A stretch of DNA of 64,000 nucleotides from Octopus sinensis (GCF_006345805.1 NC_043015.1:8804001-8868000), one strand, 5' to 3'; counted from the first letter of the stretch, positions 14,539-63,245 are shown. Program-made: numbers and translations. Notes: generated from the sequence alone by a model not told the origin.

Positions 14539-14652
14539 AGAGTTTACGAAGAATACAAAAGACGAAGACAGGTGGTGTACAAAACGAACAGATGTATTAA
14601 TATAACGCTCAGGATAGAAAAAAGTTCGAGTTACTCTCTTCTACAGAAAGGG
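14537..14652 (-). repeat. Second, more decayed copy of the 9820-9960 repeat family, between (TA)n tracts
   Basis: The reverse complement reads TTTCTGTAGAAGAGAGTAACTCGAAC...CCTGAGCGTTATATTAATACATCTGTTCGTTT...CCACCTGTCTTCGTCTTTTG, matching 9822-9945. Confidence 0.8.
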
Positions 14653-14711
14653 GCACAGGAAAAACAAGGAGAGAAAAACATGTGTGTAGTGGTTAACGAT
14701 CTTCATGGAGA

Positions 14712-14802
<91 letters not shown>

Positions 14803-19554: not shown

Positions 19555-20734
19555 ATAATGGAAACACCCAGCATCATAACATCTTAAATTTGAAATATCT
19601 ATACACCGTCAAAAACTTGTTTATTTTTATGTTTTTTGATTTATTATTAGTGCTGCTTGATATCCTTTGCTAAAATTGCTGTGTCTTTTCAGATATTATC
19701 AGAAAAAGTAATTAAAATTCATGAAAATAACAGATCCAACGGTCTTTCAAAGAGTTGATATTGCTGGTGCTTGTATGGCAGGCGTAGCGTAACGAAAATA
19801 GCCGAAATGTTTGGTGTATCTCGAAAGTACTGACAGTCTTTAGGAAAGAAGGAAAACCCTCCCGCTCGAAACAAAACTGTGGAGGAAATAAAAAACTTGC
19901 AGATAGGGAAGGTCGGAATCTTACGCAAATTGATGGAAAGGATCAAAGACGCACAGCTCTCAATATTACTGCGAGCTTACTGACCACCTCGAGAACCCAG
20001 TTTCTACAAGAACTGTTCGCCGGGAGCTGCACAAAGCCGGATTTCACAGGAGAGCTGCAATCAGAAAACCACTACTTTCAAAAGCAAATGTTGCAACGCG
20101 TTGAGATGCGGAATTGCTCCCTAGAGCAGCGGAAGTATGTTATAATCTCGGACGATTCATCCTGTACCTTATTTCCGACCACAAGACGAGTATACATATG
20201 AAGACAGCCAAAAGAGGCAATTGATCCAGAATGCTTTCTTTCAACTCTTAAACATGGAGAAGGATTTGTGTTGATTTTGGAAGTGGGGGTCAATCTCGGA
20301 AATCCGGCGCAATGGTTTCCCTTCATGGCAGAATTAATAGTGAAGACTAAGCATTATATGATCAAATTACTCCTGTGGTTTCAGAATTGTTACGGGAGGG
20401 AGGCGCAATCTTTCAGTATGGTTGTGCACCAACTCACACTGCTAAAGTTGTTACTGAATGGCACGATGAATATTCTAGTGAAGTCGAACATCTTATCTGG
20501 CCACGACAGTCCCCAGATCTCAATATTGTTGAACATTTACGGAGCATTTTAGGAAAACTGGCAAGGAGTCGATACCCTCCACCGTCATCACTACCAGAAA
20601 TGGAAACTGTTTTAGCGTAAGAATGGATAACAATTGATTTGGAAACAATTAATATGTTGTACGAGTTCATACAGACAAAGGCGGTCCTACCTCATATGAA
20701 AATAAATTTTAAGATGTTTCTATTATTTTGTCCA
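19555..20734 (+). mobile_element. Decayed Tc1-family DNA transposon (DD34E transposase pseudogene) with TIR remnants
   Basis: Fragments TVRRELHKAGFHRRAAIRKPLLSK, ISDDSS, FQYGCAPTHTAK and WPRQSPDLNIVEHL. ATAATGGAAACACC (19555) matches the reverse complement of GATGTTTCTATTAT (20713). Confidence 0.88.
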
Positions 20735-20767
20735 TACATAGATAAATATATGCATACATACATACAG

Positions 20768-20882
<115 letters not shown>

Positions 20883-20984
20883 TAATATATATATATATAT
20901 AATATATATATATATATGTGCATACATATATATATATATGTACGTATGTATATTCATTTATTTATAAGACTAGTACGTATGTTA

Positions 20985-43602: not shown

Positions 43603-44012
43603 CAAGGCAGGAAATACTAACATATTTTTATAGAAAAGATTTCACTACCGGTTTCAGTCTTTGAGACTTTTTCAACTCTAAGTATGGCAAACACATTTTA
43701 GAATATTTAAATGCATAGTATTCAAATATATATATATATATATATATACATTCAGATACATAAATGAGTAAACATCAAATGTAGGAGAGTAACCACTACA
43801 GATAAGGCAACACTGTATCTCACTGCATGCACGCTTCTATGTGTGTATATTATGTGTATATATATATTTATATACGTATATATATATATATATGTATATG
43901 TATATATGCATATGTATTCATGTATGTATATGTACATATATATATATGTCTCTCTCTATATATATATTATATGAATATGTATTTGTGTATACATATGTAT
44001 ATATATAGGTGT

Positions 44013-44057
<45 letters not shown>

Positions 44058-44379
44058 TATATATGAATGTTTTAACAAACGTAGGGAATAATAAGCACTC
44101 CGTGTCATCAGGAAATTTACTATTTTACACTTTACTAATATAATATAAACAGTATCATTTATACTATTATTACGACTTTGGGATGTTACCAATAGAACTG
44201 CAACTCCTATTACAGTATAAATTATTGTATGGAATAGAAATATATATTCAATAAAATAATATAAGCATTAAAAAACTACTATAGATAGTATTTAAAAAAA
44301 CATTTTGAAACATTTTTTTAAAAATTGATATAACTTACTTGTTATTAGTCTGTGGGGAAAGAAGATTGTTTTAATCAAC

Positions 44380-46250: not shown

Positions 46251-46688
46251 GAAATGCAACATTGTAATATTTGAAAATAACTTGAAATAACTTGAAAATA
46301 ATTTGAGGATAGGTTTGAAACACGACTGCCAACTGAATAGTGTAAATGACAATGATTAGAGTCTCTGTTAATGTAGGAGATTACTTCATTTGATTTATGT
46401 CATTTTAAATTTGCTTCTAACGTCTAGAAAATTAATGTAGTTAACGAGAGTATTAATTGAAATTGAAAGGGAGAGCCGACTAAATTGCAGAATATTTGTT
46501 GCCTCATTACTTCCCAGGAAAAATGTCGATCACTTATTTCCACTATTTTTGCTAGCGAATGTATGTCTATCGACAGAGAGATAGTGAGAAACAAAGAGAG
46601 AGAAAAAGAGATGAAAATGCATGTTTCAGTAAACATATGTATATATATATACACACACACACATATATGTATATGTACATATGTAGTC

Positions 46689-46724
<36 letters not shown>

Positions 46725-46737
46725 TTATATATATATA

Positions 46738-46790
<53 letters not shown>

Positions 46791-46792
46791 AC

Positions 46793-46841
<49 letters not shown>

Positions 46842-47479
46842 CATATATATACATATATATATACATATATATATATACATACGTATATATATATTATATA
46901 CATGTATATATACACATATGAGTAGATATGCAGTTATCACGAGTCGTGAGGTATTATAAATTTACAGTAATATAATTTCTGCTATTTGAAAAGCAGTCAT
47001 TACGTATGTTTAAATTGATTGTGTTTGAAACATGCGATTCATTTGTTGATTCAAAAGTGTATTACATGTGCATTCAGGGCGTCGTGATCGTCATTATATT
47101 TAGCAGACTGGAAAACAATGTCACATAATTCCATGCAAAGAATCATGTAGAAGAATAGTGAAAGAAACACAGTAGTTTTAGTTGTGTGATTGCCTTAGAT
47201 GTATGAAAACAATTACGAAGCTGTGCTGTTATTAAATTTCCACATCATAAGCTGTAACAGATATTCATCTTTTCACATTTTCTATCTAATATAGATTCTA
47301 TTATGCAGTATTTATATATAATATTATGACAAAGTTAAATGACAACGAGAGAACGTTAACATTGTTATTAAGAACATGAATGGTATCCAAAGAATACTAT
47401 TAAAAGAAAGAGTAACACCACCCCGCCATCATCACCCACACTACCACAACCACCATGGTCAACAACATTAATAACAATA

Positions 47480-47703: not shown

Positions 47704-47779
<76 letters not shown>

Positions 47780-47789
47780 GTTGTTGTTG

Positions 47790-47855
<66 letters not shown>

Positions 47856-47858
47856 CTC

Positions 47859-47891
<33 letters not shown>

Positions 47892-47905
47892 TAATAATAA
47901 TAATA
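47700..47905. repeat. (ATT)n/(AAT)n trinucleotide tracts (others at 22590-23170, 48441-48665, 49185-49310, 49737-50110)
   Basis: Directly visible. Confidence 0.97.
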
Positions 47906-48440
47906 GCCCTGATGCAGTACAAGACAGTGGCTCTCATGGCTTCTGATCTTAACTGATTGGATGTGTTATCATGTACGTTGTTTTGTCTTGGTATAAATGA
48001 TGGGCTACAGCAAATATTCTGCTCAATACCACAGATTTGCTTGTCAGTTGTTCGACCATAACCAGTTGAGCATGTCGCTTAGTGGCTGACGATATGTGCG
48101 TCTCTAATCACCAGCAGAACTAGTGGGGGAGCCTCATAACCAGGTGTTGAAAGGAATTCTTTGAGATTTGGATAATTCACAATTTGGAAAAATGGGTGGT
48201 TCGTTCAACATCCTTAAACAATCCTTATTCAGGGATCTTTTGAGAAGAAAATTTTAGCTGGGCGCCACCTGCAAGGTCATGCGCTATTTATATTGATATG
48301 AGATCAACATTCCGTGCACATATGGTTGTGATGCATGTGCCTGGTGTGCCCTTATCAGACAGGTAGTCATGATGGGTGTACTGGGCTTCGTATATATTCC
48401 CCCAGTTTCACTTTGATGGCATGCACTGCTCTCTCACTCA
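47906..48440. mobile_element. ~535-bp GC-richer non-coding element with (AAT)n on both sides
   Basis: Sharp boundaries AATAATA|GCCCTGATGCAG and CTCTCTCACTCA|ATAATAAC. No credible ORF. Confidence 0.55.
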
Positions 48441-48482
48441 ATAATAACAATAATAATGATAATAATAATAATAATAATAACG

Positions 48483-48551
<69 letters not shown>

Positions 48552-48563
48552 GTAATAATAGTA

Positions 48564-48595
<32 letters not shown>

Positions 48596-48621
48596 TAATA
48601 ATAATAATAATAATAATAATA

Positions 48622-48659
<38 letters not shown>

Positions 48660-48694
48660 ATAATAATCAATTAGAAAGCATTTTCTTTGTCTTC

Positions 48695-49184
48695 ATGATC
48701 TCTGACAACTATATCTGGTCTGTTGGCCTTAATTTTTCACACACAGATAGAGAAATTAAGGCCAACAGACCAGATATAGTTGTCAGAGATCATGATGAAA
48801 AAAAATGCTTTCTAATTGATGTATCAATACCGGCAGATGACAACGTGTCTCTAAAAGAAATGGAGAAACTCTCAAAATACAAAGACCTGGAAATAGAGGT
48901 AACTAGAATGTGGAATCTGAAAACAGAAACAATTCCTATTATAGTAGGTGCATTAGGCATGATAAGAACATATTCAGACAAATACATAACAAAAACACCA
49001 GGACTTACAAACACATATAACATACAGAAAATTGCACTACCAGGCACTGCACACATCCTACGCAGAACACTTTCCATACAATAACCATCAGAGCATCACA
49101 ACAAATCACAGCACATACCCAAGGCACACAGAGCTGCGCTCGGTAGTGAAGTGAAAGCACGCTATAAAAATAAAAATAAAACTA

Positions 49185-49188
<4 letters not shown>
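48695..49188 (+). mobile_element. Young 5'-truncated R4/Dong-like copy: RLE domain, 3' UTR and (AAT)n tail
   Basis: Open frame with HTDREIKANRPDIVVRD...FLIDVSIP...KEMEKLSKYKDLE (PD-(D/E)xK-type RLE). The 3' UTR ends ACTACTGA-(AAT)n, and an (AAT)n-rich tract lies just upstream. Confidence 0.9.
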
Positions 49189-49215
<27 letters not shown>

Positions 49216-49312
49216 TATTAATAATAATATAATAATAATATAATAATAATGATAATAATAATAATATAATAATAATAATAATAATATAATAATAATAATA
49301 ATAATAATAATC

Positions 49313-49515
49313 CATTCTACTATTGGCACAAGGCCTGAAATTTAGGCGAAAAGGACCAGTCAATTTTATCGACCTCAGTACCTAACTGATACTTAATTTA
49401 TCGACACCAAAAGGATGAAAGGCAAAGGCCACCCTGGCAGTATTTGAACCCAGAGCGTGAAGACAGACAAAATACCTGTAAGCATTTCACCCGGCATGTA
49501 AGAGATTCTGCGAGC
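49313..49515 (-). mobile_element. Diverged OK-type SINE
   Basis: Shows CACAAGGCCTGAAATTT, AAGGATGAAAGGCAAAG and TTTGAACCCAGAGCGT blocks. Confidence 0.75.
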
Positions 49516-49736
49516 GCAACCAAAACAACGACGATGACGACAACAATGATGATATCTTTGATTATTCGAAAATTTATCTGGTGTGGGGAGGAGTCACAAT
49601 ATTTATAATGATTAAATATTCTTAATATTCCCATTTGTAAAATGTAAGTTTGATATTAAAAAAAAGCGTAAAATGTAACTTCTGCTAGAACAAGTTAGAA
49701 TAAAAATGAATTGGTATTGGAAGAAATTTGAAAATT

Positions 49737-49799
<63 letters not shown>

Positions 49800-49982
49800 G
49801 TAATAATAATAGTAATAATAATAGTAATAATAAAAATAAATAATAATATTAATAATAATAATAATAATAATATTAATAATAATATAATAATAATAATAAT
49901 AATAGTAATAATAATAATATAATATTAATAATAATAATAATAGTAAAAATAATAATAATTATAATAATAATAATAATAATAT

Positions 49983-50032
<50 letters not shown>

Positions 50033-50057
50033 GAAGAAGAAGAAGAAGAAGAAGAAG

Positions 50058-50093
<36 letters not shown>

Positions 50094-50114
50094 AACAACA
50101 ACAACAATAATAAC

Positions 50115-53100
50115 AATGTTAATACGATCACACCAGCGACGTTTGACAAAACAGGTAACACCGGGGACGATTAAAATGTGAAAGCGATAAAACACGTTTT
50201 CGAAATTTATCCAAACCCATCGGGAATAAAAGCAGCAAATGGAGTCTAAAATAACTGACAAAATGTTGGACTATAACCTAGCAAGTAATACGCGTTAAAA
50301 TCTATTTCTATTTCCCGAATGAAATGTTGTATTTTAACTGTGTCATCTCCATCACTCGCACACAACACGTGTAAACACCCTCACCAGATTACGATCCAAT
50401 CAACATAGGACCATCTCCTTCCCAACCACCATACACAAAATATCTTAAATAAAGTAGATATTATTCAAACCAAAGATAATAAACGGGAAGTACGTATTTA
50501 TTTTAAAGTTGTTACACAAATAGTACGAACAAATATACGTGCAAAACCATTTAACACAAGAAATAAACATACCGGTGCCTTAAGAAATTGATAACCTTAA
50601 AAACAACAGAGCGGGCGTTATTCCCCATGTCCCGCAAATAAAATCAAAAACGCATAAACGGACCCGTGAGGATTATATTTCAATCCTACACGCTTATTTT
50701 ACAGCAGTGTTTTACCCACAGAAGGAAAACGCAAAGGCATATATAAACTAGATAAAGATTTATATACAGCAATTAATGAAAATAAGAGCAATGAAGGAAA
50801 ACACAACCACATATATATATATAAATTAGATAAAGGTTTCGATACAGCAATGAACTCAAGGAAACTAGGTAACAGACAGACACATATTCTCAGAAATAAA
50901 TGATCAGAAATGGAAATAGAAACTCTAAAATACATCAGGAAATTGTATATGGTAACCACGCAGCAACGCCAAAGAGTATGAGCACTGGGACTGTAAAATA
51001 CGAAAATAGACGTAACTTGTCCAACAAATCTAAATAAACAATGAATAACAACCCCGGAAAGTAGGATTGTATAATAATGAGCAAAATGCGTCAATCCAGA
51101 ATACCATAGACTAAAAGATGTACGGAAGGAAATACGAGAGGGAAACTAATGATTATGATACTTTAAAAGTAAGCATAGTCAAAGAATTCAAAGCCACAGA
51201 GCTCAGTATGGAGCACCGATTATACCTCCCAAAAATGAAAATTGATAATAAAGTTGATAATAAAACAACATATAAATAACATAAACCAGTCCGTCACAGA
51301 ACTAATAGCCACAGAAACAAGTATCAATATGACCAGGCTAAATAATATAATATATTCATCCGCCTCTGTGGCAACAAAAGAAACTAGTTACCCCCTAAAA
51401 CTTATCCAAAGAGGAGTATCACCACCCAAACAAACTAGTTGATAAATAATATCAAGAAACTTAAATGGAGAATAAGAGGAACGATCCTTCTATCCCCAAT
51501 GAAACTAGTAGACAATCAACACTACTACGTAACACAAAGAGAAGAAAAATACTACACTCATACAAAATTACAGAACAATACACACCTGAGGTAAAAAAAA
51601 GGCTAAAATAAGGCACCCTTACGAAAGCATAAAGAACCTGCCAGCATGGAAACACCAACGTTTCTTTCAACAAAACTCCAACCCCTAAAGATTTTCCCAA
51701 GAATAAAATAGCAACCAATGCAGTATCAACAGCAGAAGAAGTGGAATAGTTTGGGAAAGAAACATGGACGTTGGAAGAACAACCTAAGCACAGATCTATC
51801 AAAACAACGAACGCAACACCTGAACGACCCTCGAGCCGTATAACGACTGAAGGGGTCACCTATTTACAGCAAATCTAAGCAACTGGAAGGCACCCATGAT
51901 CGACAGATCCCCAACTTCTGATTAAAATACCCAACAGGAACATAAAAAAGCTGGCTGAGAAATTTAAAATATACTGGTAGAGACAGAGACAATACCCTAA
52001 TGGCTCACAGAAGGGCAAACTATTTAAATTCCCAAATTAAATAAAGCGGAAACCCCACAAAATTACAGACCGATAACTTGTCTCCCTACAATTTACAAAG
52101 CCTTTGCTACAATAAAATTGCAGAGAATGATCAAAGATGTGGAATAAAACAGTCTGTTTCCAGACGAGCAGAAGGTTATGCTGCAAGGGCTCATACAGCT
52201 GTGAACAGCAGCTACTTGTTAATAAATCTTGGATCGATTACCAAACTTTTTTTGACAGTATTCTCCGCACATGGATCTTAGAAACACTATCCATAACAAG
52301 GTAGCACCAATAATCATGAAATATATAAACATTCCATGAATAAATGGAAGCCAATACTACAGCTACAGACAAAGAGGGACTCATAAAAACAAACGCCATC
52401 GCCAATAGAAGTGGAATATTCCAGGGAGACACGCTCTTTCCACACCTGTTTTGCTTCGCTGTGACGCCTTTATCTGACATGGTAAACAGGACTGGATGTG
52501 GATACAACTGTTACGGCAGAACAATCAGCCACAACTTGTATACGGATTATCTAAAACTGTACGTTATAAATGATAAACAAATGGAAACATAACTACAGAC
52601 AGTACATAGATTTACCAGAGAAACAGACACGGAATTTGGCTTAGAAAAATGTTTCAACGCAACCAAGAAAAGAAGAAAACTAGTTGAGAGTAGCAACATC
52701 ACAGTTGATACAAAATATGGAATAATTAATCCAAAATCTGACATACAAATACTTAGAAATCAAAGAACTAGATACGATACAACACACACATGAAAGAGAA
52801 AATAAGAAAATAATACAATAGACGAGTTAAATTTATACTAAAAACAGAACCCAATGCGAAAAGCACAATAATAGGTATCGACATTCTAGCTGTCTTAGTT
52901 ATATGGTATAACTACAATATTCTTAAGAGGACACTTAAAATGTAATCAAAATAGATATGAAAACAAAAAAAAATAACGATAGGATTTAGAATGCACCATC
53001 CAAAATGTAACATAGAAATGTTATATATACAAAGTCTCGAAGGTGTTTGAGGCTTTATACATCTAGAAAACAATTACAAATTAACTACCAAAGGGCTACA

Positions 53101-54170
53101 GAAATATCTACTCCAGAAGCAAGGAAAACTAATACAGATAACGAGAAAACACGAGCAAACAAAACAACTATTTTCAGTCGTTAAGGAAGCTGACAAATAC
53201 AAAACAATGACTTCAGAGTACCTGACAACTATGAAGAAAAAGAAGAAACAACAAAACCCGTAAAACAACTAAAACCGAATTTAAAACTGGAACAGCAACG
53301 GATAATGATAAAAAGATGGCAAGAACAGTCCCTTCATGTTTAATACTGGGTTAAACTAACCAGAACAGAAATAGGCAAAGCAAAATCCCAACAGGATACA
53401 AAGCAGAGAATGAAGGACTTTTAACTGCAGCACAAGACGAAGGCCTTCCCACTAGAAATTATCAAAAAGATGTAACGAAAATAAATACAGGTAACAGCAG
53501 AATATGTAAAGATGGAAACAAAACAATAAATTATATTTTTTCTGTCTGCCCATTCCTAGCTTAGACGGAATATATTCACAAGCACGACAGAGTTGGGACC
53601 TACATACGGAAGCTATGACAACACTATTGAATAACAACAGAAAACAGATAGTATAGACACACGCCAGAAAAGATCAACGAAAATGAGACAGCAAGCATAC
53701 TTTGAGGTACGCCAATATACAAATTGGAGAAATTAAGCCAATATGTCGGATAGAGATGTCAGAGGTATCCACGAGAAAGAGCTTTCTAATCGATGTATCA
53801 ATACCAACAGATGACAATGTTTCTCTAAAATAAAAAAAAAACGATCAACTTTCATAATACAAAAAACCTGGAAATAGAGGTAATTCGAATGTGGAGTCTA
53901 AAAACAGAAACAATTCCTATCATAGTAAACGCAATAGTTTTGATGAAGATATATTCAGACAAATACATAACAAAACACCAGGACTAACAATTATATATAG
54001 CATACAGAAAATAGCACCCCTAGTCTCCGAAAACATCCTACGTAAAACACTTTCAATACAGTAAAAATAAGAATATCACAACAAAGCACAGCACATACCC
54101 AAGGCAGAAAAAGTTGCGATCGGTATTCCAACGAAAGCTAGGATATAATCTTATTTGTATAAGACTATTT
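50115..54170 (+). mobile_element. Near full-length, decayed R4/Dong-like retrotransposon flanked by (AAT)n
   Basis: Fragments WLTEGQT, NYRPITCLPTIYK, GIFQGDTLFP, LYTDYLKLY (decayed YMDD), EFGLEKC, HPKCNIE and FLIDVSIPTDDNVSLK. The 3' UTR is homologous to 49085-49160. Confidence 0.88.
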
Positions 54171-56742
54171 AATAATAATAATAATAATAATAATCATGAT
54201 GATGATAGAATTTTAATTATATACCGCAGTCTTAACGTTAATAATATTAATAATTGATGAATTCGATCCTATTCATACCCAATTTGGAGATATTCTTTTA
54301 TATGAATAGTTTAATTCGTAATCCTACAATAGTAGCAACACAGACACATACATATACAATCGCTCATATATAGTGATTTATACTCCAGATAGTGAGCAAA
54401 AAATTAATCAGGACTAGGAATGACTAATATGAAGTTATTATTCTAAGCATAATATGCAAACATTTTATTATGTATAGTAAGAAGTATCAGAGAGAAACGA
54501 TGAAAAATTGCAAATACTTAGATGTCAAAAAATTTATATATATAGAAATAATCGAAATTTTAGTGAATACAGTAACGCTATGTATTTAATAGGTCTATTC
54601 GCCATTTACTACATCAGCGACTGAAAGGTTACTGCTCTCCGAGAAAAGTTGAATAGTGATAATTCGTCGGTGAGAGGGTATCTGTCATTGACATAGCGTT
54701 GTAGGATAAAATTACCTGATTTGGCAATTCCAGCGTCGATGCCAGACAGTTTTCGTCTGCTAATAATATGTCTCTATGCTTCACTCTGTTCATATACAGG
54801 AAAGAATCTCTAAAGAAGTATCCACGGTATTCGGCACCCTTATAGTACATAATACGTTAAGTAGTATGTGTAATTTGCCATTCTGTATTCATATTTCCTC
54901 CTTCGCAAATATTTATTTTTCAATAGAACCGATGGCGGTGTACGACATCAGTGGCCGAGAAAGCAATTTTATGCTTATATCGGTGCGAGTATGATTTCGT
55001 TGGTATGCGGTAAACCGACACCTGTAGGCTGAAATCATTTCATCTGTCAACTGCGAAATCCATGCAAGACGGCATCCTCTTCTAGATGTACAAATTCTTA
55101 GCAACGTACGTATAATTTATAATTAACCTCCATGTTAAATAAGAAATAGAAATAGACATGAAGTCAAAGGAAAAAAACACAAATAAATATAAATACAAAA
55201 ACAATGAAAATGGAACATAAGCATGTGAAGTGATTCCAATTATCGCATAGATTGTTTGAAGAAAATGTATAGTTCGGAAACTTGGATCAGTGTGCGGGCG
55301 TGTCAGTCCGACAAGAGTACAGGAAAAGAAAATCAGTTCTTTTGAATGTTAACTTAAACGATACCAAGTATGATGTAGTAGTCGCAAAATGATCAATGTT
55401 TTTTGTGAAAGACACAAATGTACAATGAACCGTGAATCGACTATCCCCACCCGAAAATTGCAGGCATTGTGCTTCTAGAATAAAGGATTATTAGCTAATA
55501 AACTTCCAGCGCCTCATGAAATCTTCATCCATTTCCTATATTTTTAGATCATAGCAGAAATTTATTCAACTAGTGATAGCTAAAATGTTAATATTTCAGT
55601 AACACACTAGTTTTCATGGGGATATTCTTTACTAGATCTGAAATTACAGTAATTCTCCGTTTTACGTGGATGAATTTATTTTTCTTCCTTTACTAAACTT
55701 AAGTCGTTTAATTTGTTTAGTATCAAACTATTAGATTATTTGCTTGATATATTATTATAGATCGTAACAGAAATATCAGCGGTTAGGTTACCTGAAATTA
55801 CATAAGAAATATTGTTCAATTTTTTAATGTACCTATGATCATTTGTAGCAGTTATAATTCCTGGAATTATATATTTAACTTTTCCACTGAAAGAATATTA
55901 CTGAATTTACCAAGTATTGGTATTCCTATAAGAACATCAAATTTTAGCCTTCTTTGAGGCAACTATTCTGGCAGCGATAAGTATGTGTAGTTGTATATGA
56001 CAGCTCGTTAATTTTCCTATTAAATATTCTCTGCTACCGATATTTAGAAAGGAGTATTTCTTTCCAAAAATTTCCAATTCCAATTTTTATAGTATTGGAG
56101 AAGAATCAGCTATCTTAGGATATTCAACGCTTCCTTCAGTTATTCCGGCTACTAAGGGTTTGCATATGTTCTAGGGCAACGACGCAGCCCGTGTTACATC
56201 ATTGGCAAAATGTTGAGAATGTACGAGCTGTATTGCACATACGACCCTAACATCAAATTCAGAGTTCAGTCAAGGCTGGGACCGCATGACGTACATCCAC
56301 TACACAATTCAGGCACACAAAACGCAAATTCCCAGCAATAAAATATTTTTCTTTAACATACCCTGCTCTTTATTACATCAGCGCAAAGCGACCAAAGAGA
56401 AGATTGTTGCCATCAAGTGATGAACACAAACGCAGAAACACACACACACACACGCACATACACATGGCCATACGAATACATACTCGCACACACATTCTTA
56501 CATATATACATTAATATACGTAGATTTATACATATACATACATATGGGTTTGTGTATTGAATATATATATATATATATAACATTATATAAAAGGGCTTAG
56601 TAAAATAAATTACTTTGCCGCATACTGAACTCGTTAGAAATAGCAGCTAAAAAAACTATTTCTAACACTTAAAGAAAACCTCTCTCATATAGTGTTTGCT
56701 CAATTCAACTCAAGAAAGTATGAGGGTAGAGACATTAAAAAA

Positions 56743-56829
56743 TCAAATGCAAAGGTTATTTGAGTACGTACGTTTCAAGATTAGCCAAAATCGACCCTTC
56801 TCTCATCAGCTCAGAATGCCCTTGTTTGA
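56743..56829 (-). ncRNA. Type I hammerhead ribozyme, array unit L1
   Basis: Reverse complement of the plus-strand copies; TCATCAG at 56803-56809. Confidence 0.88.
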
Positions 56830-57293
56830 AATTGAAAACACTGAAAATGGGAGCATACCCTTTCGGCTTGTTATCGCTTCTGAAGAACTGTTCCAAACTA
56901 ACAGTGCCAACAAACTCAAATATGCAAGAGAAAAATTTCTGCTCTCCCCTTTCCACCAGCGTGGGTTAAAATCAGCAAACACTATGCTTTTTTCGGTAAA
57001 ATCCGAGACAATTAAGTAGAGAGAGATGAATTATAATTTCAACAATTGAGGGTAAAATTAATTAATTAATTAATCAATTTCACCAAGTATTCAGTATGCA
57101 AAGGGACCATTTAAGGCAAATTCAAATTATTACATTATATAAAAGGGCTTAGTAAAATAAATACTTTGCCGCATACTGAACTCGTTAGAAATAGCAGCTA
57201 AAAAAACTATTTCTAACACTTAAAGAAAACCTCTCTCATATAGTGTTTGCTCAATTCAACTCAAGAAAGTATGAGGGTAGAGACATTAAAAAA

Positions 57294-57380
57294 TCAAATG
57301 CAAAGGTTATTTGAGTACGTACGTTTCAAGATTAGCCAAAATCGACCCTTCTCTCATCAGCTCAGAATGCCCTTGTTTGA
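57294..57380 (-). ncRNA. Type I hammerhead ribozyme, array unit L2
   Basis: TCATCAG at 57354-57360; identical core and stems. Confidence 0.88.
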
Positions 57381-57845
57381 ATTTGAAAACACTGAAAATG
57401 GAGCATACCCTTTCGGCTTGTTATCGCTTCTGAAGATCTGTTCCAAACTAACAGTGCCAACAAACTCAAATATGCAAGAGAAAAATTTCTGCTCTCTCCC
57501 CTTTCCACCAGCGTGGGTTAAAATCAGCAAACACTATGCTTTTTTCGGTAAAATCCGAGACAATTAAGTAGAGAGAGATGAATTATAATTTAAACAATTG
57601 AGGGTAAAATTAATTAATTAATTAATCAATTTCACCAAGTATTCAGTATGCAAAGGGACCATTTAAGGCAAATTCAAATTATTACATTATATAAAAGGGC
57701 TTAGTAAAATAAATTACTTTGCCGCATACTGAACTCGTTAGAATAGCAGCTAAAAAAACTATTTCTAACACTTAAAGAAAACCTCTCTCATATAGTGTTT
57801 GCTCAATTCAACTCAAGAAAGTATGAGGGTAGAGACATTAAAAAA

Positions 57846-57932
57846 TCAAATGCAAAGGTTATTTGAGTACGTACGTTTCAAGATTAGCCAAAATCGACCC
57901 TTCTCTCATCAGCTCAGAATGCCCTTGTTTGA
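57846..57932 (-). ncRNA. Type I hammerhead ribozyme, array unit L3
   Basis: TCATCAG at 57906-57912; identical core and stems. Confidence 0.88.
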
Positions 57933-58334
57933 ATTTGAAAACACTGAAAATGGGAGCATACCCTTTCGGCTTGTTATCGCTTCTGAAGATCTGTTCCAAA
58001 CTAACAGTGCCAACAAACTTTTATATAATGTAATAATTTGAATTTGCCTTAAATGGTCCCTTTGCATACTGAATACTTGGTGAAATTGATTAATTAATTA
58101 ATTAATTTTACCCTCAATTGTTGAAATTATAATTCATCTCTCTCTACTTAATTGTCTCGGATTTTACCGAAAAAAGCATAGTGTTTGCTGATTTTAACCC
58201 ACGCTGGTGGAAAGGGGAGAGCAGAAATTTTTCTCTTGCATATTTGAGTTTGTTGGCACTGTTAGTTTGGAACAGATCTTCAGAAGCGATAACAAGCCGA
58301 AAGGGTTATGCTCCCATTTTCAGTGTTTTCAATT

Positions 58335-58421
58335 TCAAACAAGGGCATTCTGAGCTGATGAGAGAAGGGTCGATTTTGGCTAATCTTGAAACGTACGTAC
58401 TCAAATAACCTTTGCATTTGA
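58335..58421 (+). ncRNA. Type I hammerhead ribozyme, array unit R1 (predicted cleavage after GUA at 58399)
   Basis: CTGATGA at 58355-58361. Stem II pairs GAGA/TCTT and GGTCG/TGGCT. GAAA at 58388-58391 is followed by C-GTAC-G-T-A. Stem I pairs TGAG/CTCA, ATT/AAT, CAAGGG/CCTTTG and TCAAA/TTTGA. Confidence 0.9.
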
Positions 58422-58884
58422 TTTTTTAATGTCTCTACCCTCATACTTTCTTGAGTTGAATTGAGCAAACTATATGAGAGAGGTTTTCTTTAAGTGTTAG
58501 AAATAGTTTTTTTAGCTGCTATTTCTAACGAGTTCAGTATGCGGCAAAGTAATTTATTTTACTAAGCCCTTTTATATAATGTAATAATTTGAATTTGCCT
58601 TAAATGGTCCCTTTGCATACTGAATACTTGGTGAAATTGATTAATTAATTAATTAATTTTACCCTCAATTGTTTAAATTATAATTCATCTCTCTCTACTT
58701 AATTGTCTCGGATTTTACCGAAAAAAGCATAGTGTTTGCTGATTTTAACCCACGCTGGTGGAAAGGGGAGAGCAGAAATTTTTCTCTTGCATATTTGAGT
58801 TTGTTGGCACTGTTAGTTTGGAACAGATCTTCAGAAGCGATAACAAGCCGAAAGGGTATGCTCCCATTTTCATGTTTTTCAAAT

Positions 58885-58971
58885 TCAAACAAGGGCATTC
58901 TGAGCTGATGAGAGAAGGGTCGATTTTGGCTAATCTTGAAACGTACGTACTCAAATAACCTTTGCATTTGA
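58885..58971 (+). ncRNA. Type I hammerhead ribozyme, array unit R2
   Basis: CTGATGA at 58905; cleavage site A at 58949. Confidence 0.88.
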
Positions 58972-59434
58972 TTTTTTAATGTCTCTACCCTCATACTTTC
59001 TTGAGTTGAATTGAGCAACACACTATATGAGAGAGGTTTTCTTTAAGTGTTAGAAATAGTTTTTTTAGCTGCTATTTCTAACGAGTTCAGTATGCGGCAA
59101 AGTAATTTATTTTACTAAGCCCTTTTATATAATGTAATAATTTGAATTTGCCTAAATGGTCCCTTTGCATACTGAATACTTGGTGAAAATGATTAATTAA
59201 TTAATTAATTTTACCCTCAATTGTTGAAATTATAATTCATCTCTCTCTACTTAATTGTCTCGGATTTTACCGAAAAAAGCATAGTGTTTGCTGATTTTAA
59301 CCCACTGGTGGAAAGGGGAGAGCAGAAATTTTTCTCTTGCATATTTGAGTTTGTTGGCACTGTTAGTTTGGAACAGTTCTTCAGAAGCGATAACAAGCCG
59401 AAAGGGTATGCTCCCATTTTCAGTGTTTTCAATT

Positions 59435-59521
59435 TCAAACAAGGGCATTCTGAGCTGATGAGAGAAGGGTCGATTTTGGCTAATCTTGAAACGTACGTAC
59501 TCAAATAACCTTTGCATTTGA
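59435..59521 (+). ncRNA. Type I hammerhead ribozyme, array unit R3
   Basis: CTGATGA at 59455; cleavage site A at 59499. Confidence 0.88.
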
Positions 59522-59985
59522 TTTTTTAATGTCTCTACCCTCATACTTTCTTGAGTTGAATTGAGCAAACACTATATGAGAGAGGTTTTCTTTAAGTGTT
59601 AGAAATAGTTTTTTTAGCTGCTATTTCTAACGAGTTCAGTATGCGGCAAAGTAATTTATTTTACTAAGCCCTTTTATATAATGTAATAATTTGAATTTGC
59701 CTTAAATGGTCCCTTTGCATACTGAATACTTGGTGAAATTGATTAATTAATTATTAATTTTACCCTCAATTGTTGAAATTATAATTCATCTCTCTCTACT
59801 TAATTGTCTCGGATTTTACCGAAAAAAGCATAGTGTTTGCTGATTTTAACCCACGCTGGTGGAAAGGGGAGCGCAGAAATTTTTCTCTTGCATATTTGAG
59901 TTTGTTGGCACTGTTAGTTTGGAACAGATCTTCAGAAGCGATAACAAGCCGAAAGGGTATGCTCCCATTTTCAGTGTTTTCAAAT

Positions 59986-60072
59986 TCAAACAAGGGCATT
60001 CTGAGCTGATGAGAGAAGGGTCGATTTTGGCTAATCTTGAAACGTACGTACTCAAATAACCTTTGCATTTGA
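59986..60072 (+). ncRNA. Type I hammerhead ribozyme, array unit R4
   Basis: CTGATGA at 60006; cleavage site A at 60050. Confidence 0.88.
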
Positions 60073-60533
60073 TTTTTTAATGTCTCTACCCTCATACTTT
60101 CTTGAGTTGAATTGAGCAAACACTATATGAGAGAGGTTTTCTTTAAGTGTTAGAATAGTTTTTTTAGCTGCTATTTCTAACGAGTTCAGTATGCGGCAAA
60201 GTAATTTATTTTACTAAGCCCTTTTATAAATGTAATAATTTGAATTTGCCTTAAATGGTCCCTTGCATACTGAATACTTGGTGAAATTGATTAATTAATT
60301 AATTAATTTTACCCTCAATTGTTGAAATTATAATTCATCTCTCTCTACTTAATTGTCTCGGATTTTACCGAAAAAAGCATAGTGTTTGCTGATTTTAACC
60401 CACGCTGGTGGAAGGGGAGAGCAGAAATTTTTCTCTTGCATATTTGAGTTTGTTGGCACTGTTAGTTTGGAACAGATCTTCAGAAGCGATAACAAGCCGA
60501 AAGGGTATGCTCCCATTTTCAGTGTTTTCAAAT

Positions 60534-60620
60534 TCAAACAAGGGCATTCTGAGCTGATGAGAGAAGGGTCGATTTTGGCTAATCTTGAAACGTACGTACT
60601 CAAATAACCTTTGCATTTGA
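60534..60620 (+). ncRNA. Type I hammerhead ribozyme, array unit R5
   Basis: CTGATGA at 60554; cleavage site A at 60598. Confidence 0.88.
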
Positions 60621-61084
60621 TTTTTTAATGTCTCTACCCTCATACTTTCTTGAGTTGAATTGAGCAAACACTATATGAGAGAGGTTTTCTTTAAGTGTTA
60701 GAAATAGTTTTTTTAGCTGCTATTTCTAACGAGTTCAGTATGCGGCAAAGTAATTTATTTTACTAAGCCCTTTTATATAATGTAATAATTTGAATTTGCC
60801 TTAAATGGTCCCTTTGCATACTGAATACTTGGTGAAATTGATTAATTAATTAATTAATTTTACCCTCAATTGTTGAAATTATAATTCATCTCTCTCTACT
60901 TAATTGTCTCGGATTTTACCGAAAAAAGCATAGTGTTTGCTGATTTTAACCCACGCTGGTGGAAAGGGGAGAGCAGAATTTTTCTCTTGCATATTTGAGT
61001 TTGTTGGCACTGTTAGTTTGGAACAGATCTTCAGAAGCGATAACAAGCCGAAAGGGTATGCTCCCATTTTCAGTGTTTTCAAAT

Positions 61085-61171
61085 TCAAACAAGGGCATTC
61101 TGAGCTGATGAGAGAAGGGTCGATTTTGGCTAATCTTGAAACGTACGTACTCAAATAACCTTTGCATTTGA
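61085..61171 (+). ncRNA. Type I hammerhead ribozyme, array unit R6
   Basis: CTGATGA at 61105; cleavage site A at 61149. Confidence 0.88.
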
Positions 61172-61632
61172 TTTTTTAATGTCTCTACCCTCATACTTTC
61201 TTGAGTTGAATTGAGCAAACACTATATGAGAGAGGTTTTCTTTAAGTGTTAGAAAGTTTTTTTAGCTGCTATTTCTAACGAGTTCAGTATGCGGCAAAGT
61301 AATTTATTTTACTAAGCCCTTTTATATAATGTAATAATTTGAATTTGCCTTAAATGGTCCCTTTGCATACTGAATACTTGGTGAAATTGATTAATTAATT
61401 AATTAATTTTACCCTCAATTGTTGAAATTATAATTCATCTCTCTCTACTTAATTGTCTCGGATTTTACCGAAAAAAGCATAGTGTTTGCTGATTTTACCC
61501 ACGCTGGTGGAAAGGGGAGAGCAGAAATTTTTCTCTTGCATATTTGAGTTTGTTGGCCTGTTAGTTTGGAACAGATCTTCAGAAGCGATAACAAGCCGAA
61601 AGGGTATGCTCCCATTTTCAGTGTTTTCAAAT

Positions 61633-61719
61633 TCAAACAAGGGCATTCTGAGCTGATGAGAGAAGGGTCGATTTTGGCTAATCTTGAAACGTACGTACTC
61701 AAATAACCTTTGCATTTGA
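61633..61719 (+). ncRNA. Type I hammerhead ribozyme, array unit R7
   Basis: CTGATGA at 61653; cleavage site A at 61697. Confidence 0.88.
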
Positions 61720-61977
61720 TTTTTTAATGTCTCTACCCTCATACTTTCTTGAGTTGAATTGAGCAAACACTATATGAGAGAGGTTTTCTTTAAGTGTTAG
61801 AAATAGTTTTTTTAGCTGCTATTTCTAACGAGTTCAGTATGCGGCAAAGTAATTTATTTTACTAAGCCCTTTTATAATGTAATAATTTGAATTTGCCTTA
61901 AATGGTCCCTTTGCATACTGAATACTTGGTGAAATTGATTAATTAATTAATTAATTTTACCCTCAATTGTTGAATTA

Positions 61978-62026
<49 letters not shown>

Positions 62027-62049
62027 ATTGTTATTCTGTATTCGTAGCT

Positions 62050-62830
62050 GTAGGATGGTATACACTTTCTGTATTACCTTAGAATCCATTAAGGTACTCT
62101 TTGGCAAAATGTTGCTATCTTGGTATTATGTAGTATGCATATAGAATGTTGCCTTGTTACTCGCGTAATTCCCAAGTTACGCACGAACACCGAATCTGAG
62201 AATGCACTACACCCCTTCTGCTTTGTCTTTAGATTTTTGGTCGATAGTGGAGTGCACGAAACTTCTCAGTATCAAAGGGCATCTTATTTCCGTTTGAGAA
62301 TTGCATTTAGGTTGCTTTACTGTTATGTGTGCTATCATGGTCATTTATTGTATATGGTAATTCTGTAACATCAGAACTGATGTTGCGGCCGACTGTATGA
62401 ATGAAGTCATGTCTGAAAGAGACACTACGAGCACTAGACGTCATAGTACAATTCTTAGAAGGATTCCACTGAGAATTGATGTCTCCCCATAGGGATAAAT
62501 TCCACCCTTTATCACATCACGTAACCACTCTCCTAGATTTCCAGTGATACGAAGGTCACATAGGTTTTGACTTATCATCCGGCGTTCAACATCGTCAAAG
62601 GCTATGTAGAAGTTGATATACATCGGATCTTCATTTGAGTGATTGAGAAGCTGATCCACTAGCAATTCATAATGCTGTAGTCATGTTGTGCCTGTGAGCA
62701 AGTTATTTTTTTCCACAAATGTGATCAGCCTCCTGACAACATATTCGCTGAACTTCCTAATATGCGAACTCAGATAAATAGGCTTGTAATTTACAGTGTC
62801 TTCACCGCTTCACCCGTTATGGAGGGGCCT
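62050..62830 (-). mobile_element. Decayed CR1/L2-like LINE RT fragment
   Basis: The minus strand reads NYKPIYLSSHIRKFSEYVVRRL...LQHYELLVDQLLN..DPMYINFYIAFDDVERRMI..LCDLRITGNLGEWL, matching RT motifs 1-3 of CR1-group LINEs. Confidence 0.72.
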
Positions 62831-63245
62831 ATTATGTCTTATATATATTTCATTATTTTGACACCCGCAGTGGATTGGCGAGGGCGTCCATCCACGTCAT
62901 TAAATGAACTGACGGAAATCTATTTTGGTCACTTTGTGAGTTCAAGTTAATTTCATTTATGTCGAGCTAATGAATGGTTGCTACTTTCCCATATAGATCT
63001 GCAGTGCTGAAAAACTCACCAACTATACTTATTTACATATATCGCAGTGGGGAGTTGAGCAAAATTTAGATTTATTTAATCGTCACTTCACTTAACTTCC
63101 TGGAGTGTGCTGTGACTGAACACCGTTCTTCAAATCATGTCTCTATCTCTCTCTTTCTGTCCCTCTCTCTTTATCTATCAACCTATTTATTTACCTATCT
63201 ATATAACTACACCTCTCTCACTTTCTCTCTCTCTCTCTCTCTCTC

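What the first reader, a model, noticed from the sequence alone, without database searches (positions are those of the whole stretch)
56580..61974. Ribozyme satellite: ~10 tandem 550-bp units, each with an intact type I hammerhead (retrozyme-like element)
Seen in sequence: every unit has a perfect hammerhead core (CUGAUGA...GAAA...GUA), a paired stem II and a ~18-bp interrupted stem I. The units are nearly identical, there is no credible coding capacity, and the array sits in (TA)n. Established knowledge: tandem type I hammerhead repeats are the form of newt satellite 2, Schistosoma SM-alpha, cricket pDo500 and the metazoan non-LTR retrozymes, which self-cleave to monomers, circularise and are thought to use Penelope-like RTs. 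Inference: this is a young, non-autonomous, self-cleaving RNA replicon with a monomer longer than the few hundred nucleotides typical of animal retrozymes. I do not recall a described cephalopod family of this kind, but I cannot check.
Basis: partly seen in the sequence, partly recalled or inferred. Interest (0 to 1): 0.92.

Follow-up and report, generated by a model that had tools for sequence, protein, structure and literature searches.

The report
Hammerhead-ribozyme retrozyme array, head-to-head inverted
A 5.4-kb block of about ten near-identical 550-bp non-coding repeats, each carrying a well-formed self-cleaving hammerhead ribozyme motif, looks like a young member of the known animal "retrozyme" family of parasitic repeats, and it sits as two opposed blocks inside a (TA)n microsatellite rather than as one simple tandem run.

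Summary
The repeat is real. It spans 56580-61974, with units of 548-552 bp that are 97.6-99.5% identical and 34% GC.

It is not one tandem run. There are 2.6 units on the minus strand (56580-58019) and 7.2 units on the plus strand (58018-61974). They are joined head-to-head, and both sense 3' ends abut (TA)n.

All ten copies carry an identical type I hammerhead motif: CUGAUGA, helix II, GAAAC, the palindromic helix III ACGUACGU, and GUA|C. A standard descriptor finds only these ten sites in the window. Chance expectation is about 3e-5 per unit.

Rfam's hammerhead models, and a small model I built from four validated retrozyme ribozymes, do not score it significantly.

Supporting features:
- Two copies are predicted to form an 8-bp double-hammerhead helix III.
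- The circular sense monomer folds unusually stably (z = -5.1; antisense -1.8).
- No variant falls inside the ribozyme.

Shared substitutions are mirror-symmetric about the junction. Both arms therefore copy one ordered multimer, by Penelope-type priming on both strands or by a DNA fold-back, and not by rolling-circle copying of a monomer circle.

Verdict: a new member of the known non-LTR retrozyme kind. Cleavage, circles and the source species are untested, and 552 nt is within the published length range.

The parts
56561..56579 (.). Left (TA)n flank, one half of the presumed microsatellite target
   Evidence: Read directly. The unit sequence ends at ...CCCTTTTATATAATGT (sense) and runs straight into TATATA.
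56580..58019 (-). Left block: 2.6 units with the ribozyme sense on the minus strand. In sense direction it runs from consensus position 401 (at 58019) through two full units to about consensus 185 (at 56580). The sense 3' end faces the left flank.
   Evidence: blastn of the 552-nt consensus against the window; end alignments; inverted-repeat pairs I1-I25.
58018..58019 (.). Head-to-head junction. The 2-nt microhomology (CT) is shared by the 5'-truncated ends of both blocks (consensus 401 on the left, consensus 170 on the right).
   Evidence: read directly.
58018..61974 (+). Right block: 7.2 units with the ribozyme sense on the plus strand. It runs from consensus 170, through six full units (58400-61697), to about consensus 279-285, where the sequence merges into (TA)n.
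61975..62025 (.). Right (TA)n flank
   Evidence: TRF row 61976-62024, period 2, 25 copies; sequence.
58335..58421 (+). Hammerhead motif with predicted cleavage between 58399 and 58400. Stem I 5' strand UCAAACAAGGG..UGAG; CUGAUGA at 58355-58361; helix II 58362-58387; GAAA; helix III ACGUACGU; A17 at 58399; stem I 3' strand CUCA..CCUUUG..UUUGA.
58885..58971 (+). Hammerhead motif, cleavage after 58949
   Evidence: Identical sequence; descriptor hit.
59435..59521 (+). Hammerhead motif, cleavage after 59499
59986..60072 (+). Hammerhead motif, cleavage after 60050
60534..60620 (+). Hammerhead motif, cleavage after 60598
61085..61171 (+). Hammerhead motif, cleavage after 61149
61633..61719 (+). Hammerhead motif, cleavage after 61697
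56743..56829 (-). Hammerhead motif on the minus strand. A17 is the complement of 56765; cleavage falls between 56765 and 56764.
57294..57380 (-). Hammerhead motif on the minus strand, A17 at 57316
57846..57932 (-). Hammerhead motif on the minus strand, A17 at 57868

Best explanation
This is a young copy array of a non-autonomous, non-coding retroelement of the metazoan non-LTR retrozyme kind, the class that includes newt satellite 2, Schistosoma Sm-alpha and the mussel, coral and axolotl retrozymes.

Shown here:
- The unit is 552 bp, 34% GC, and repeated about 9.8 times.
- Each copy holds a complete type I hammerhead motif.
- Helix III is only 2 bp, capped by a palindromic tetraloop.
- The array lies inside a (TA)n microsatellite as two head-to-head blocks, with the sense 3' ends outward.

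Inferred by analogy with validated retrozymes:
- Multimeric sense transcripts pair the self-complementary ACGUACGU of neighbouring units into a double hammerhead.
- They cleave after GUA, releasing 552-nt monomers with 5'-OH and 2',3'-cyclic phosphate ends.
- Stem I and the rest of a highly paired fold hold those ends together.
- A host RtcB-type ligase closes them into a circle, in which the weak single helix III prevents re-cleavage.

Inferred from the architecture:
- This locus arose when a Penelope-like reverse transcriptase/GIY-YIG endonuclease nicked both strands of an AT-rich (TA)n target and primed cDNA synthesis on both. UA-rich internal template sites (consensus ~185 and ~282) served as start points.
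- The two cDNAs were joined at their far ends through a 2-nt microhomology.
- Unit-specific substitutions are mirrored in the two arms. The template was therefore an ordered multimeric RNA read through from a source array, not a monomer circle copied by rolling-circle reverse transcription.
For: - Repeat anatomy.
- The motif is complete and identical in all ten copies.
- It satisfies the field's criteria CUGANGA / GAAAY / RUH with intact helices (PMC7229834 supplement).
- The descriptor scan finds only these ten sites in the window and recovers the validated coral and mussel ribozymes.
- The null gives 0 hits in 20 Mb x 2 (background composition) and 1 hit in 20 Mb x 2 (unit composition), about 3e-5 per unit.
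- Helix III, ACGUACGU, has the same architecture as the mussel's ACGCGCGU and shares the coral's GUAC loop in ACAGUACUGU. The GUA triplet also occurs in the validated axolotl Ax353.
- Cofolding two copies gives an 8-bp intermolecular helix III: -43.6 against 2 x -16.1 kcal/mol.
- The stem I duplex is -11.6 kcal/mol and is reached by 0.75% of shuffled flanks.
- The circular sense monomer has an MFE of -146.5 kcal/mol, z = -5.1 against dinucleotide shuffles. The antisense gives -125.6, z = -1.8.
- By my count, none of ~26 variant events falls in the ~85-nt ribozyme. My estimate of the chance of that is about 0.013.
- No protein relatives were found for the reading frames.
- Published properties of Penelope-like elements fit the locus. 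These are tandem insertions with an adjacent inverted 5'-truncated copy and a microsatellite/(TA)n bias (PMC8557442). The protein nicks and extends both strands at AT-rich DNA with internal initiation (PMC11167929).
- Mirror-symmetric shared substitutions: 277T in L1 and R1; 430T in L2 and R2; 486T in L2, R2 and R0.
Against: - No hammerhead family of Rfam 15 reports the motif, even at E<=10 on 111 nt.
- A covariance model built from four validated retrozyme hammerheads aligns it end to end, but at only 10.5 bits (E ~1.2). Six unrelated window sites score higher.
- The 92-nt ribozyme region alone is not more stable than shuffles (z = -0.11).
- The 10.1-11.1 pair is G.U instead of the highly conserved G-C. 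Helix II is unusually long (26 nt) and rich in wobble pairs, so activity may be low.
- All ten copies are identical in the ribozyme and no relative was found elsewhere, so there is no covariation evidence.
- No Penelope-like element is visible in the window. The only reverse transcriptase there belongs to a LINE.
- Transcription, cleavage and circles are untested.
- The mirrored variants fit a DNA-level fold-back duplication equally well.
Confidence: 0.7

Rival explanations
1. The array is an ordinary satellite that merely retains a hammerhead motif from an old Penelope-like or retrozyme ancestor. On this view it grew and is kept uniform by DNA-level processes such as unequal exchange and gene conversion. 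The inverted block arose by a fold-back or template-switch duplication of the first 2.6 units of the right block. No RNA life cycle operates today.
For: - The mirror-symmetric variants are exactly what an inverted duplication with a 231-nt single-copy spacer (consensus 170-400 of unit R0) and a 2-nt microhomology junction would give.
- No other copy or fragment of the unit lies elsewhere in the 64-kb window.
- The covariance models do not recognise the ribozyme.
Against: - The ribozyme is fully intact and invariant in all ten copies, while about 26 variant events hit the rest of the unit.
- The fold is exceptionally stable for the sense strand only.
- Both outer ends are sense 3' ends inside one (TA)n. 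That is the expected signature of target-primed reverse transcription on both strands by a Penelope-like protein (PMC11167929; PMC8557442).
- The units are too similar (five substitution sites in 5.4 kb) for an old relic.
Confidence: 0.17
2. The unit is not an independent family. It is the terminal pseudo-LTR region of an autonomous Penelope-like element, amplified here as a partial-tandem fragment without its reading frame.
For: - Hammerheads sit in the pseudo-LTRs of canonical Penelope-like elements (PMC4209133).
- In Xenopus, retrozyme consensus sequences are sister to pseudo-LTRs (bioRxiv 10.64898/2026.07.22.740005).
- The tandem-plus-inverted architecture and the (TA)n target are typical of these elements.
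Against: - There is no reverse transcriptase or GIY-YIG reading frame in the array or elsewhere in the window.
- Ten successive units carry no coding body.
- The ribozyme has a canonical 2-bp helix III with a tetraloop and a long stem I. [quoted passage not shown]
- The distinction is partly semantic if retrozymes derive from pseudo-LTRs.
Confidence: 0.1
3. The hammerhead resemblance is a chance motif in an AT-rich satellite.
For: Rfam and the four-sequence model give no significant score. The local fold is no more stable than shuffles.
Against: - The descriptor null expectation is about 3e-5 per unit and below about 0.003 per 64-kb window.
- Features not required by the descriptor are also present. 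These are the fully palindromic 8-nt helix III, the 15-bp stem I, tandem context, low GC and the (TA)n target.
Confidence: 0.03

Closest known systems
Mytilus galloprovincialis non-LTR retrozyme (Mg353) and its type I hammerhead (Cervera & de la Pena 2020, PMC7229834)
   Same: Both are tandem, AT-rich, non-coding repeats in a mollusc-type genome. Both have a type I hammerhead with a CUGAUGA core, GAAAC, and a helix III of 2 bp plus a palindromic tetraloop (mussel ACGCGCGU, here ACGUACGU). Both are predicted to form a highly self-paired circle.
   Different: The unit is 552 nt against about 350-400 nt. Helix II is 26 nt with an internal loop and a G.U closing pair, against a 4-bp stem with a 5-nt loop and a G-C pair. 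The cleavage triplet is GUA against GUC. I saw no sequence similarity outside the ribozyme core. The mussel element has proven cleavage and circular RNA; this one has neither.
Newt satellite 2 / axolotl retrozymes Ax330 and Ax353
   Same: All are tandem satellite-like repeats with type I hammerheads whose weak, palindromic helix III makes them act as double hammerheads. Ax353 also uses GUA and has a non-Watson-Crick pair (U.U) at the base of helix II.
   Different: The hosts differ (an amphibian, against probably a mollusc). The units differ in length (330-350 bp against 552 bp). The amphibian elements reach up to about 126,000 copies, whereas copy number here is unknown.
Penelope-like elements and their insertion signature (Arkhipova lab; Craig et al. 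2021, PMC8557442; Frangieh et al. 2024, PMC11167929)
   Same: They share head-to-tail partial tandems with an adjacent inverted 5'-truncated copy, a preference for AT-rich/(TA)n targets, undetectable target-site duplications, a hammerhead in the repeated region, and a protein that nicks and extends both DNA strands.
   Different: There is no RT/GIY-YIG reading frame here. The two 3' ends are about 97 nt apart in unit phase, rather than separated by the 30-40-bp 'tail'. The hammerhead is canonical-like rather than minimal.
Schistosoma Sm-alpha and cave-cricket pDo500 hammerhead satellites
   Same: All are tandem or dispersed short repeats that encode type I hammerheads and are transcribed as multimers.
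   Different: Sm-alpha behaves as a SINE-like element with an efficient single hammerhead and a stable helix III. The motif here is built for dimeric action.

Membership tests
Hammerhead ribozyme, type I | Conserved core: C3 U4 G5 A6 N7 G8 A9 ... G12 A13 A14 ... A15.1-U16.1, then H17 at the cleavage site (CUGANGA / GAAAY / RUH) | tested here: met
   CUGAUGA, GAAAC and GUA are present and identical in all ten copies.
Hammerhead ribozyme, type I | Three helices around the core in the right order, with helices II and III closed by loops and helix I open | tested here: met
   Descriptor scan. The MFE fold recovers stem I and helix II. The hammerhead-constrained fold is -13.9 against an MFE of -16.1 kcal/mol.
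Hammerhead ribozyme, type I | G10.1-C11.1 closing pair of helix II (highly conserved, not absolute) | tested here: not met
   The pair is G.U, with G10.1 retained. The validated axolotl Ax353 has U.U at this position, so this lowers expected activity rather than excluding membership.
Hammerhead ribozyme, type I | Significant score against curated covariance models (Rfam hammerhead families) | tested here: not met
   No hammerhead family is reported at gathering score, or at E<=10 on 7.5 kb or 111 nt. My own model from four validated retrozyme hammerheads gives 10.5 bits, E ~1.2.
Hammerhead ribozyme, type I | Covariation in the helices across relatives | not testable with these tools
   All ten copies are identical in the ribozyme. 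No relatives turned up in the metagenome or viral scans.
Hammerhead ribozyme, type I | Mg2+-dependent self-cleavage at the predicted site | not testable with these tools
   Needs in vitro transcription of monomer and dimer constructs.
Metazoan non-LTR retrozymes | Short repeats in tandem (dimers to large multimers), each with a type I hammerhead | tested here: met
   9.8 units of 548-552 bp with ten motifs. The length lies within the published 51-972 bp range.
Metazoan non-LTR retrozymes | Low GC (<45-50%); no LTR, PBS or PPT; no protein coding | tested here: met
   GC is 33.9%. The only long frame is an orphan antisense ORF, frameshifted in several copies and without relatives. I did not run a formal PBS/PPT search.
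Metazoan non-LTR retrozymes | Weak helix III (1-2 bp) with a small palindromic loop, allowing a dimeric hammerhead | tested here: met
   A-U and C-G pairs plus the loop GUAC. The 8-nt palindrome forms an intermolecular helix on cofolding, with about 11 kcal/mol gained. The feature is defined in PMC4209133.
Metazoan non-LTR retrozymes | Monomer RNA predicted to be stable and highly self-paired | tested here: met
   Circular MFE -146.5 kcal/mol, 61% of bases paired, z = -5.1. This is a prediction only.
Metazoan non-LTR retrozymes | Expression as monomeric linear and circular RNA | not testable with these tools
   No transcriptome of the source organism is available here.
Metazoan non-LTR retrozymes | Co-occurrence with autonomous Penelope-like elements in the same genome | not testable with these tools
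   Only 64 kb is available, and it holds a LINE (Exo_endo_phos + RVT_1) but no Penelope-like element.
Autonomous Penelope-like element | Single ORF with a telomerase-like RT and a GIY-YIG endonuclease between pseudo-LTRs | tested here: not met
   No frame in the array is longer than 108 codons. No Pfam match was found for the two array frames tested.

The most novel reading that the evidence does not exclude
The locus may be a fresh in vivo footprint of how retrozymes are mobilised. On this reading a Penelope-like enzyme primed on both strands of a (TA)n target and copied a long, heterogeneous multimeric transcript, not the monomer circle assumed in the current model. The circular RNA would then be a by-product or a storage form rather than the transposition template.

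A bolder and less likely variant is that the 99-codon antisense frame, which spans the ribozyme and is intact only across unit boundaries or in a circle, is translated. That would make this a coding retrozyme.
Probability: 0.12. Interest if true: 0.65.

Novelty: new member of a known kind. Interest (0 to 1): 0.4.

Why it matters
Retrozymes are the main known natural source of ribozyme-made circular RNA in animals. How they move is still a model rather than a demonstrated pathway.

This locus would add a family in a lineage, probably cephalopod or another mollusc, for which I found no description in the searchable literature.

More usefully, it is a very young insertion whose details can be read off directly. 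These are 3' ends outward in (TA)n, 5' ends joined by a 2-nt microhomology, and unit-specific variants mirrored in both arms. Those details bear on two questions: whether the template is a circle or a multimeric transcript, and whether Penelope-like enzymes prime on both strands in vivo as they do in vitro.

The head-to-head arrangement could also yield a 1.4-kb hairpin RNA if read through, which is a plausible trigger for small-RNA silencing of the family. All of this rests on one locus and on untested ribozyme activity.

Tried and rejected
1. Rfam cmscan at gathering score on the whole window, at E<=10 on 55500-63000, and at E<=10 on 58320-58430. No hammerhead or other ribozyme family appeared on either strand. 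The only matches were weak miRNA/snoRNA-like chance hits.

2. A covariance model (R1) built from four experimentally validated retrozyme hammerheads in the PMC7229834 supplement. It aligns the ten copies end to end, but at 10.5 bits (E ~1.2), below six unrelated sites. With four sequences the model is dominated by the primary sequence of stem I, so I treat the result as uninformative.

3. TRF could not see the array, because its longest period is 500.

4. Scans of metagenome and viral contigs with CTGATGAG-N15-30-TGAAACGTACGTA. The metagenome scan gave five loci. By eye they lack an adjacent 4-bp helix II or stem I pairing and look like chance or coding matches. The viral scan gave none.

5. 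An attempt to reach other copies through the reading frames. The exact look-up was not on record. The word-indexed search of 5.8 billion proteins gave no hit. Full HMMER against 1.84 billion representatives gave a single hit to a low-complexity repeat protein, which I judge spurious. Pfam and PDB gave nothing.

6. Organism identification through the window's LINE. The best named relatives are cuttlefish proteins at 53% identity. Closer hits (75%) are unnamed JGI/ENA contigs. The result is suggestive only.

7. A test of whether the left block is a recent copy of one particular register of the right block. Total differences are similar in all registers (15-21). Only the substitutions single out the mirror register.

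8. A relaxed minimal-hammerhead scan for Penelope-like remnants elsewhere in the window found none.

9. Rolling-circle copying of a monomer or small-multimer circle as the origin of this array. I rejected it because the substitutions are unit-specific, non-periodic and mirrored.

Full report
**Observation**

The region 56580-61974 is filled by a repeat with start-to-start spacing of 548-552 bp. TRF missed it only because its longest period is 500. I cut the array at the predicted cleavage sites. That gave eight full units, which are 97.6-99.5% identical, and a 552-nt consensus with 33.9% GC.

The array is not a simple tandem run. The repeat finder reports dozens of long, 96-100% complementary inverted pairs between 56576-58026 and 58018-61876. 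blastn of the consensus resolves two blocks:
- The left block runs from 58019 down to 56580 on the minus strand. It covers consensus 401-552, two full units, then consensus 1 to about 185.
- The right block runs from 58018 to about 61974-61979 on the plus strand. It covers consensus 170-552, six full units, then consensus 1 to about 279-285.

The two blocks meet head-to-head. The sense 5' ends, truncated at different unit phases, share a 2-nt microhomology (CT, 58018-58019). Both sense 3' ends run into (TA)n, at about 56561-56579 and at 61975-62025. No other copy or fragment of the unit lies elsewhere in the window.

**The ribozyme motif**

All ten copies share an identical stretch. It reads 5'-UCAAACAAGGGCAUUCUGAG / CUGAUGA / GAGA-AG-GGUCG-AUUU-UGGCU-AA-UCUU / GAAA / C-GUAC-G / UA | CUCAAAUAACCUUUGCAUUUGA.

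This gives the full conserved core (CUGANGA, GAA, A15.1-U16.1, H17 = A) and a C1.1-G2.1 pair. Helices II and III are closed and helix I is open, which is type I topology. It meets the criteria used in the field, namely CUGANGA / GAAAY / RUH with intact helices (PMC7229834 supplement).

Two features are off-consensus. The 10.1-11.1 pair is G.U rather than G-C. Helix II is long: 4 bp, a 2x2 internal loop, 5 bp including three wobbles, and a tetraloop.

**Is it more than chance?**

I wrote a descriptor requiring:
- CUGANGA;
- a 4-bp helix II directly adjacent to the core;
- GAAAY;
- a helix III of at least 2 bp ending in RUH;
- a 4-bp stem I.

It finds exactly the ten array sites and nothing else on either strand of the 64-kb window. 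It also recovers the experimentally validated coral and mussel retrozyme ribozymes. In first-order Markov sequence it gave 0 hits in 20 Mb x 2 strands with background composition. With unit composition it gave 1 hit, which is about 3e-5 per unit.

Features the descriptor did not ask for are present as well:
- The whole helix III segment ACGUACGU is an 8-nt palindrome.
- Stem I extends to 15 bp (-11.6 kcal/mol), a value reached by 0.75% of shuffled flanks.
- By my count, none of about 26 variant events in the array falls in the roughly 85-nt ribozyme. My estimate of the chance of that is about 0.013.

**Negative results that must be stated**

No Rfam 15 hammerhead family reports the motif at gathering score, or at E<=10 on 7.5 kb, or even on 111 nt.

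I also built a covariance model from four validated retrozyme hammerheads (coral Amil224, mussel Mg353, axolotl Ax353 and Ax330). It aligns the ten copies end to end in the proposed register, but at only 10.5 bits (E ~1.2). Six unrelated sites score higher. With four sequences that model mostly rewards the stem I sequence, so I regard it as uninformative.

The 92-nt ribozyme region is no more stable than shuffles (z = -0.11), although its MFE has the hammerhead's three-way topology. No relatives could be fetched. The metagenome pattern scan gave five loci that by eye look like chance matches, and the viral scan gave none. There is therefore no covariation evidence.

**Comparison with validated retrozyme ribozymes**

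The published constructs show helix III architectures of the same type:
- mussel ACGCGCGU: 2 bp plus a palindromic tetraloop;
- coral ACAGUACUGU: the same GUAC loop;
- axolotl Ax353 ACACGUGU: a GUA cleavage triplet and a U.U pair at the base of helix II.

The literature describes most metazoan type I hammerheads as having a 1-2-bp helix III with a 2-4-nt palindromic loop. Such motifs are inactive singly but active as dimers in tandem transcripts (PMC4209133; PMC7229834).

Cofolding two copies of the motif here predicts exactly that. An 8-bp intermolecular helix III forms, with -43.6 kcal/mol against 2 x -16.1.

**The whole monomer**

Folded as a circle, the 552-nt sense RNA has an MFE of -146.5 kcal/mol with 61% of bases paired. 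That is z = -5.1 against 100 dinucleotide shuffles. The antisense circle reaches only -125.6, z = -1.8.

The strand asymmetry points to wobble-dependent structure on the ribozyme strand. It fits the "highly self-paired" circles reported for retrozymes. In this fold the two ends created by cleavage are held together by stem I.

**Coding capacity**

The longest frame is antisense to the ribozyme. It is 99 ATG-started codons (108 stop to stop) and crosses the unit boundary. It is longer than in about 99% of mononucleotide shuffles.

It is nevertheless frameshifted differently in several copies. The three substitutions inside it all change the amino acid. It has no relative in 5.8 billion clustered proteins, Pfam or the PDB. 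Full HMMER against 1.84 billion representatives gave one hit to a low-complexity repeat protein, which I judge spurious. I treat the frame as non-coding and record it as a curiosity.

**How the locus arose**

The substitutions are few: five sites in 5.4 kb. The shared ones are mirror-symmetric about the junction:
- 277T occurs in the first full unit of both arms (L1, R1).
- 430T and 486T occur in the second full unit of both arms (L2, R2).
- 486T also occurs in R0.

The roughly 21 indels are all private, mostly 1-2 nt, and often sit in short homopolymer runs. They may be assembly errors.

My estimate of the chance of the mirror placement for the two independent shared variants is about 1/56. 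Both arms are therefore copies of one ordered series of slightly different units. The variants show no periodicity along the right block. This argues against rolling-circle reverse transcription of a monomer or small-multimer circle, which is the current general model for tandem retrozyme insertions.

Two origins remain.

(a) **Priming on both strands by a Penelope-like protein.** Such elements typically insert as partial tandems with an adjacent inverted 5'-truncated copy, and they favour microsatellites including (TA)n (PMC8557442). The purified Anolis element nicks AT-rich DNA on both strands, extends both, and starts reverse transcription inside the RNA (PMC11167929). That predicts sense 3' ends outward at the target, 5' ends joined inside, and initiation at internal template sites. 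Here those sites are UA-rich, at consensus ~185 (UUAUAUAAUGU) and ~282 (AAAUUAUAA).

(b) **A DNA-level fold-back or template-switch duplication** of the first 2.6 units of a pre-existing array, leaving a 231-nt single-copy spacer.

I favour (a) slightly, because both outer junctions lie in one (TA)n. By my estimate from the TRF rows, (TA)n covers only about 1.5% of the window. The sequence cannot decide between the two.

**What it is and how it probably works**

The best reading is a young array of a non-LTR retrozyme-type element.

Shown: the repeat, the motif, the architecture and the target.

Inferred from validated relatives:
- sense multimeric transcripts cleave through double hammerheads;
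- 552-nt monomers are ligated by a host RtcB-type ligase into stable circles;
- a Penelope-like enzyme supplied in trans mobilises the RNA.

A read-through transcript across the junction would form a 1.4-kb hairpin. That is a possible small-RNA trigger, and it is inference only.

**Novelty**

The unit length is inside the published range: 51-972 bp for consensus sequences, and circles of 150 to over 1000 nt. Retrozymes are already characterised in a mollusc, the mussel.

The held literature contains no paper describing a cephalopod hammerhead retrozyme. I could not query Repbase or Dfam. The cephalopod origin of the window rests only on a LINE reverse transcriptase whose named relatives are cuttlefish proteins at 53% identity.

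I therefore file it as a new member of a known kind. One feature is of wider interest: the mirrored-variant, head-to-head insertion footprint.

Noticed in passing
window 59796-60119 (-) and equivalents, e.g. 56696-57019 (+) and 58695-59021 (-): There is an orphan reading frame antisense to the ribozyme, 99 ATG-started codons (107-108 from TTG/GTG starts). It crosses the unit boundary, so it is intact only in multimers or circles. It is longer than in about 99% of shuffles but frameshifted in several copies, and it has no relatives in any protein library searched.
   Followed up: yes
window 3968-6791 (-): A LINE-type retrotransposon lies here, with an apurinic-type endonuclease ORF (5973-6791, Exo_endo_phos) and a reverse transcriptase ORF (4252-5388, RVT_1). 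The segment is GC-rich (55% against about 33% elsewhere). The nearest named relatives are Acanthosepion pharaonis proteins at 53% identity, and unnamed JGI/ENA contigs reach 75%.
   Followed up: partly
window 2773-3050, 8917-9178, 9586-9826: Long (AGAT)n/(ATAG)n/(TCTA)n tetranucleotide microsatellites lie on both sides of the LINE. They give the spurious 'SIYLSIYL' reading frames.
   Followed up: no
window 14441-14800, 20734-20939, 43846-44064, 46635-46912, 47704-50032: The window holds many long (TA)n and (AAT)n microsatellites, so potential AT-rich targets for Penelope-type insertion are common locally. Only the one at 56561/61975 is occupied.
   Followed up: partly
window 50001-54000 and 1-2000: There is strong AT skew (+0.32 to +0.37 at 50-54 kb, and -0.34 at 1-2 kb) with no obvious cause examined.
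   Followed up: no
window 56580-61974 (variant table): About 21 private 1-2-nt indels, often in short homopolymer runs, account for most differences between units. This looks more like long-read consensus error than mutation, so true unit identity may exceed 99.5%.
   Followed up: partly
consensus 175-182 of each unit, e.g. window 58023-58030: Each unit has a TATA-box-like TATATAAT. It lies at the same place as the 3' end of the left block and just inside the 5' end of the right block. Whether it is a promoter element or only a (TA)n-like priming site is unknown.
   Followed up: no
L004:8487-8524, L006:6091-6128, L007:7572-7609 (marine metagenome contigs): Three contigs share an identical stretch matching CTGATGAG...TGAAACGTACGTA. 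By eye it lacks an adjacent helix II, so it is probably a conserved coding segment of a marine organism and not a hammerhead.
   Followed up: partly
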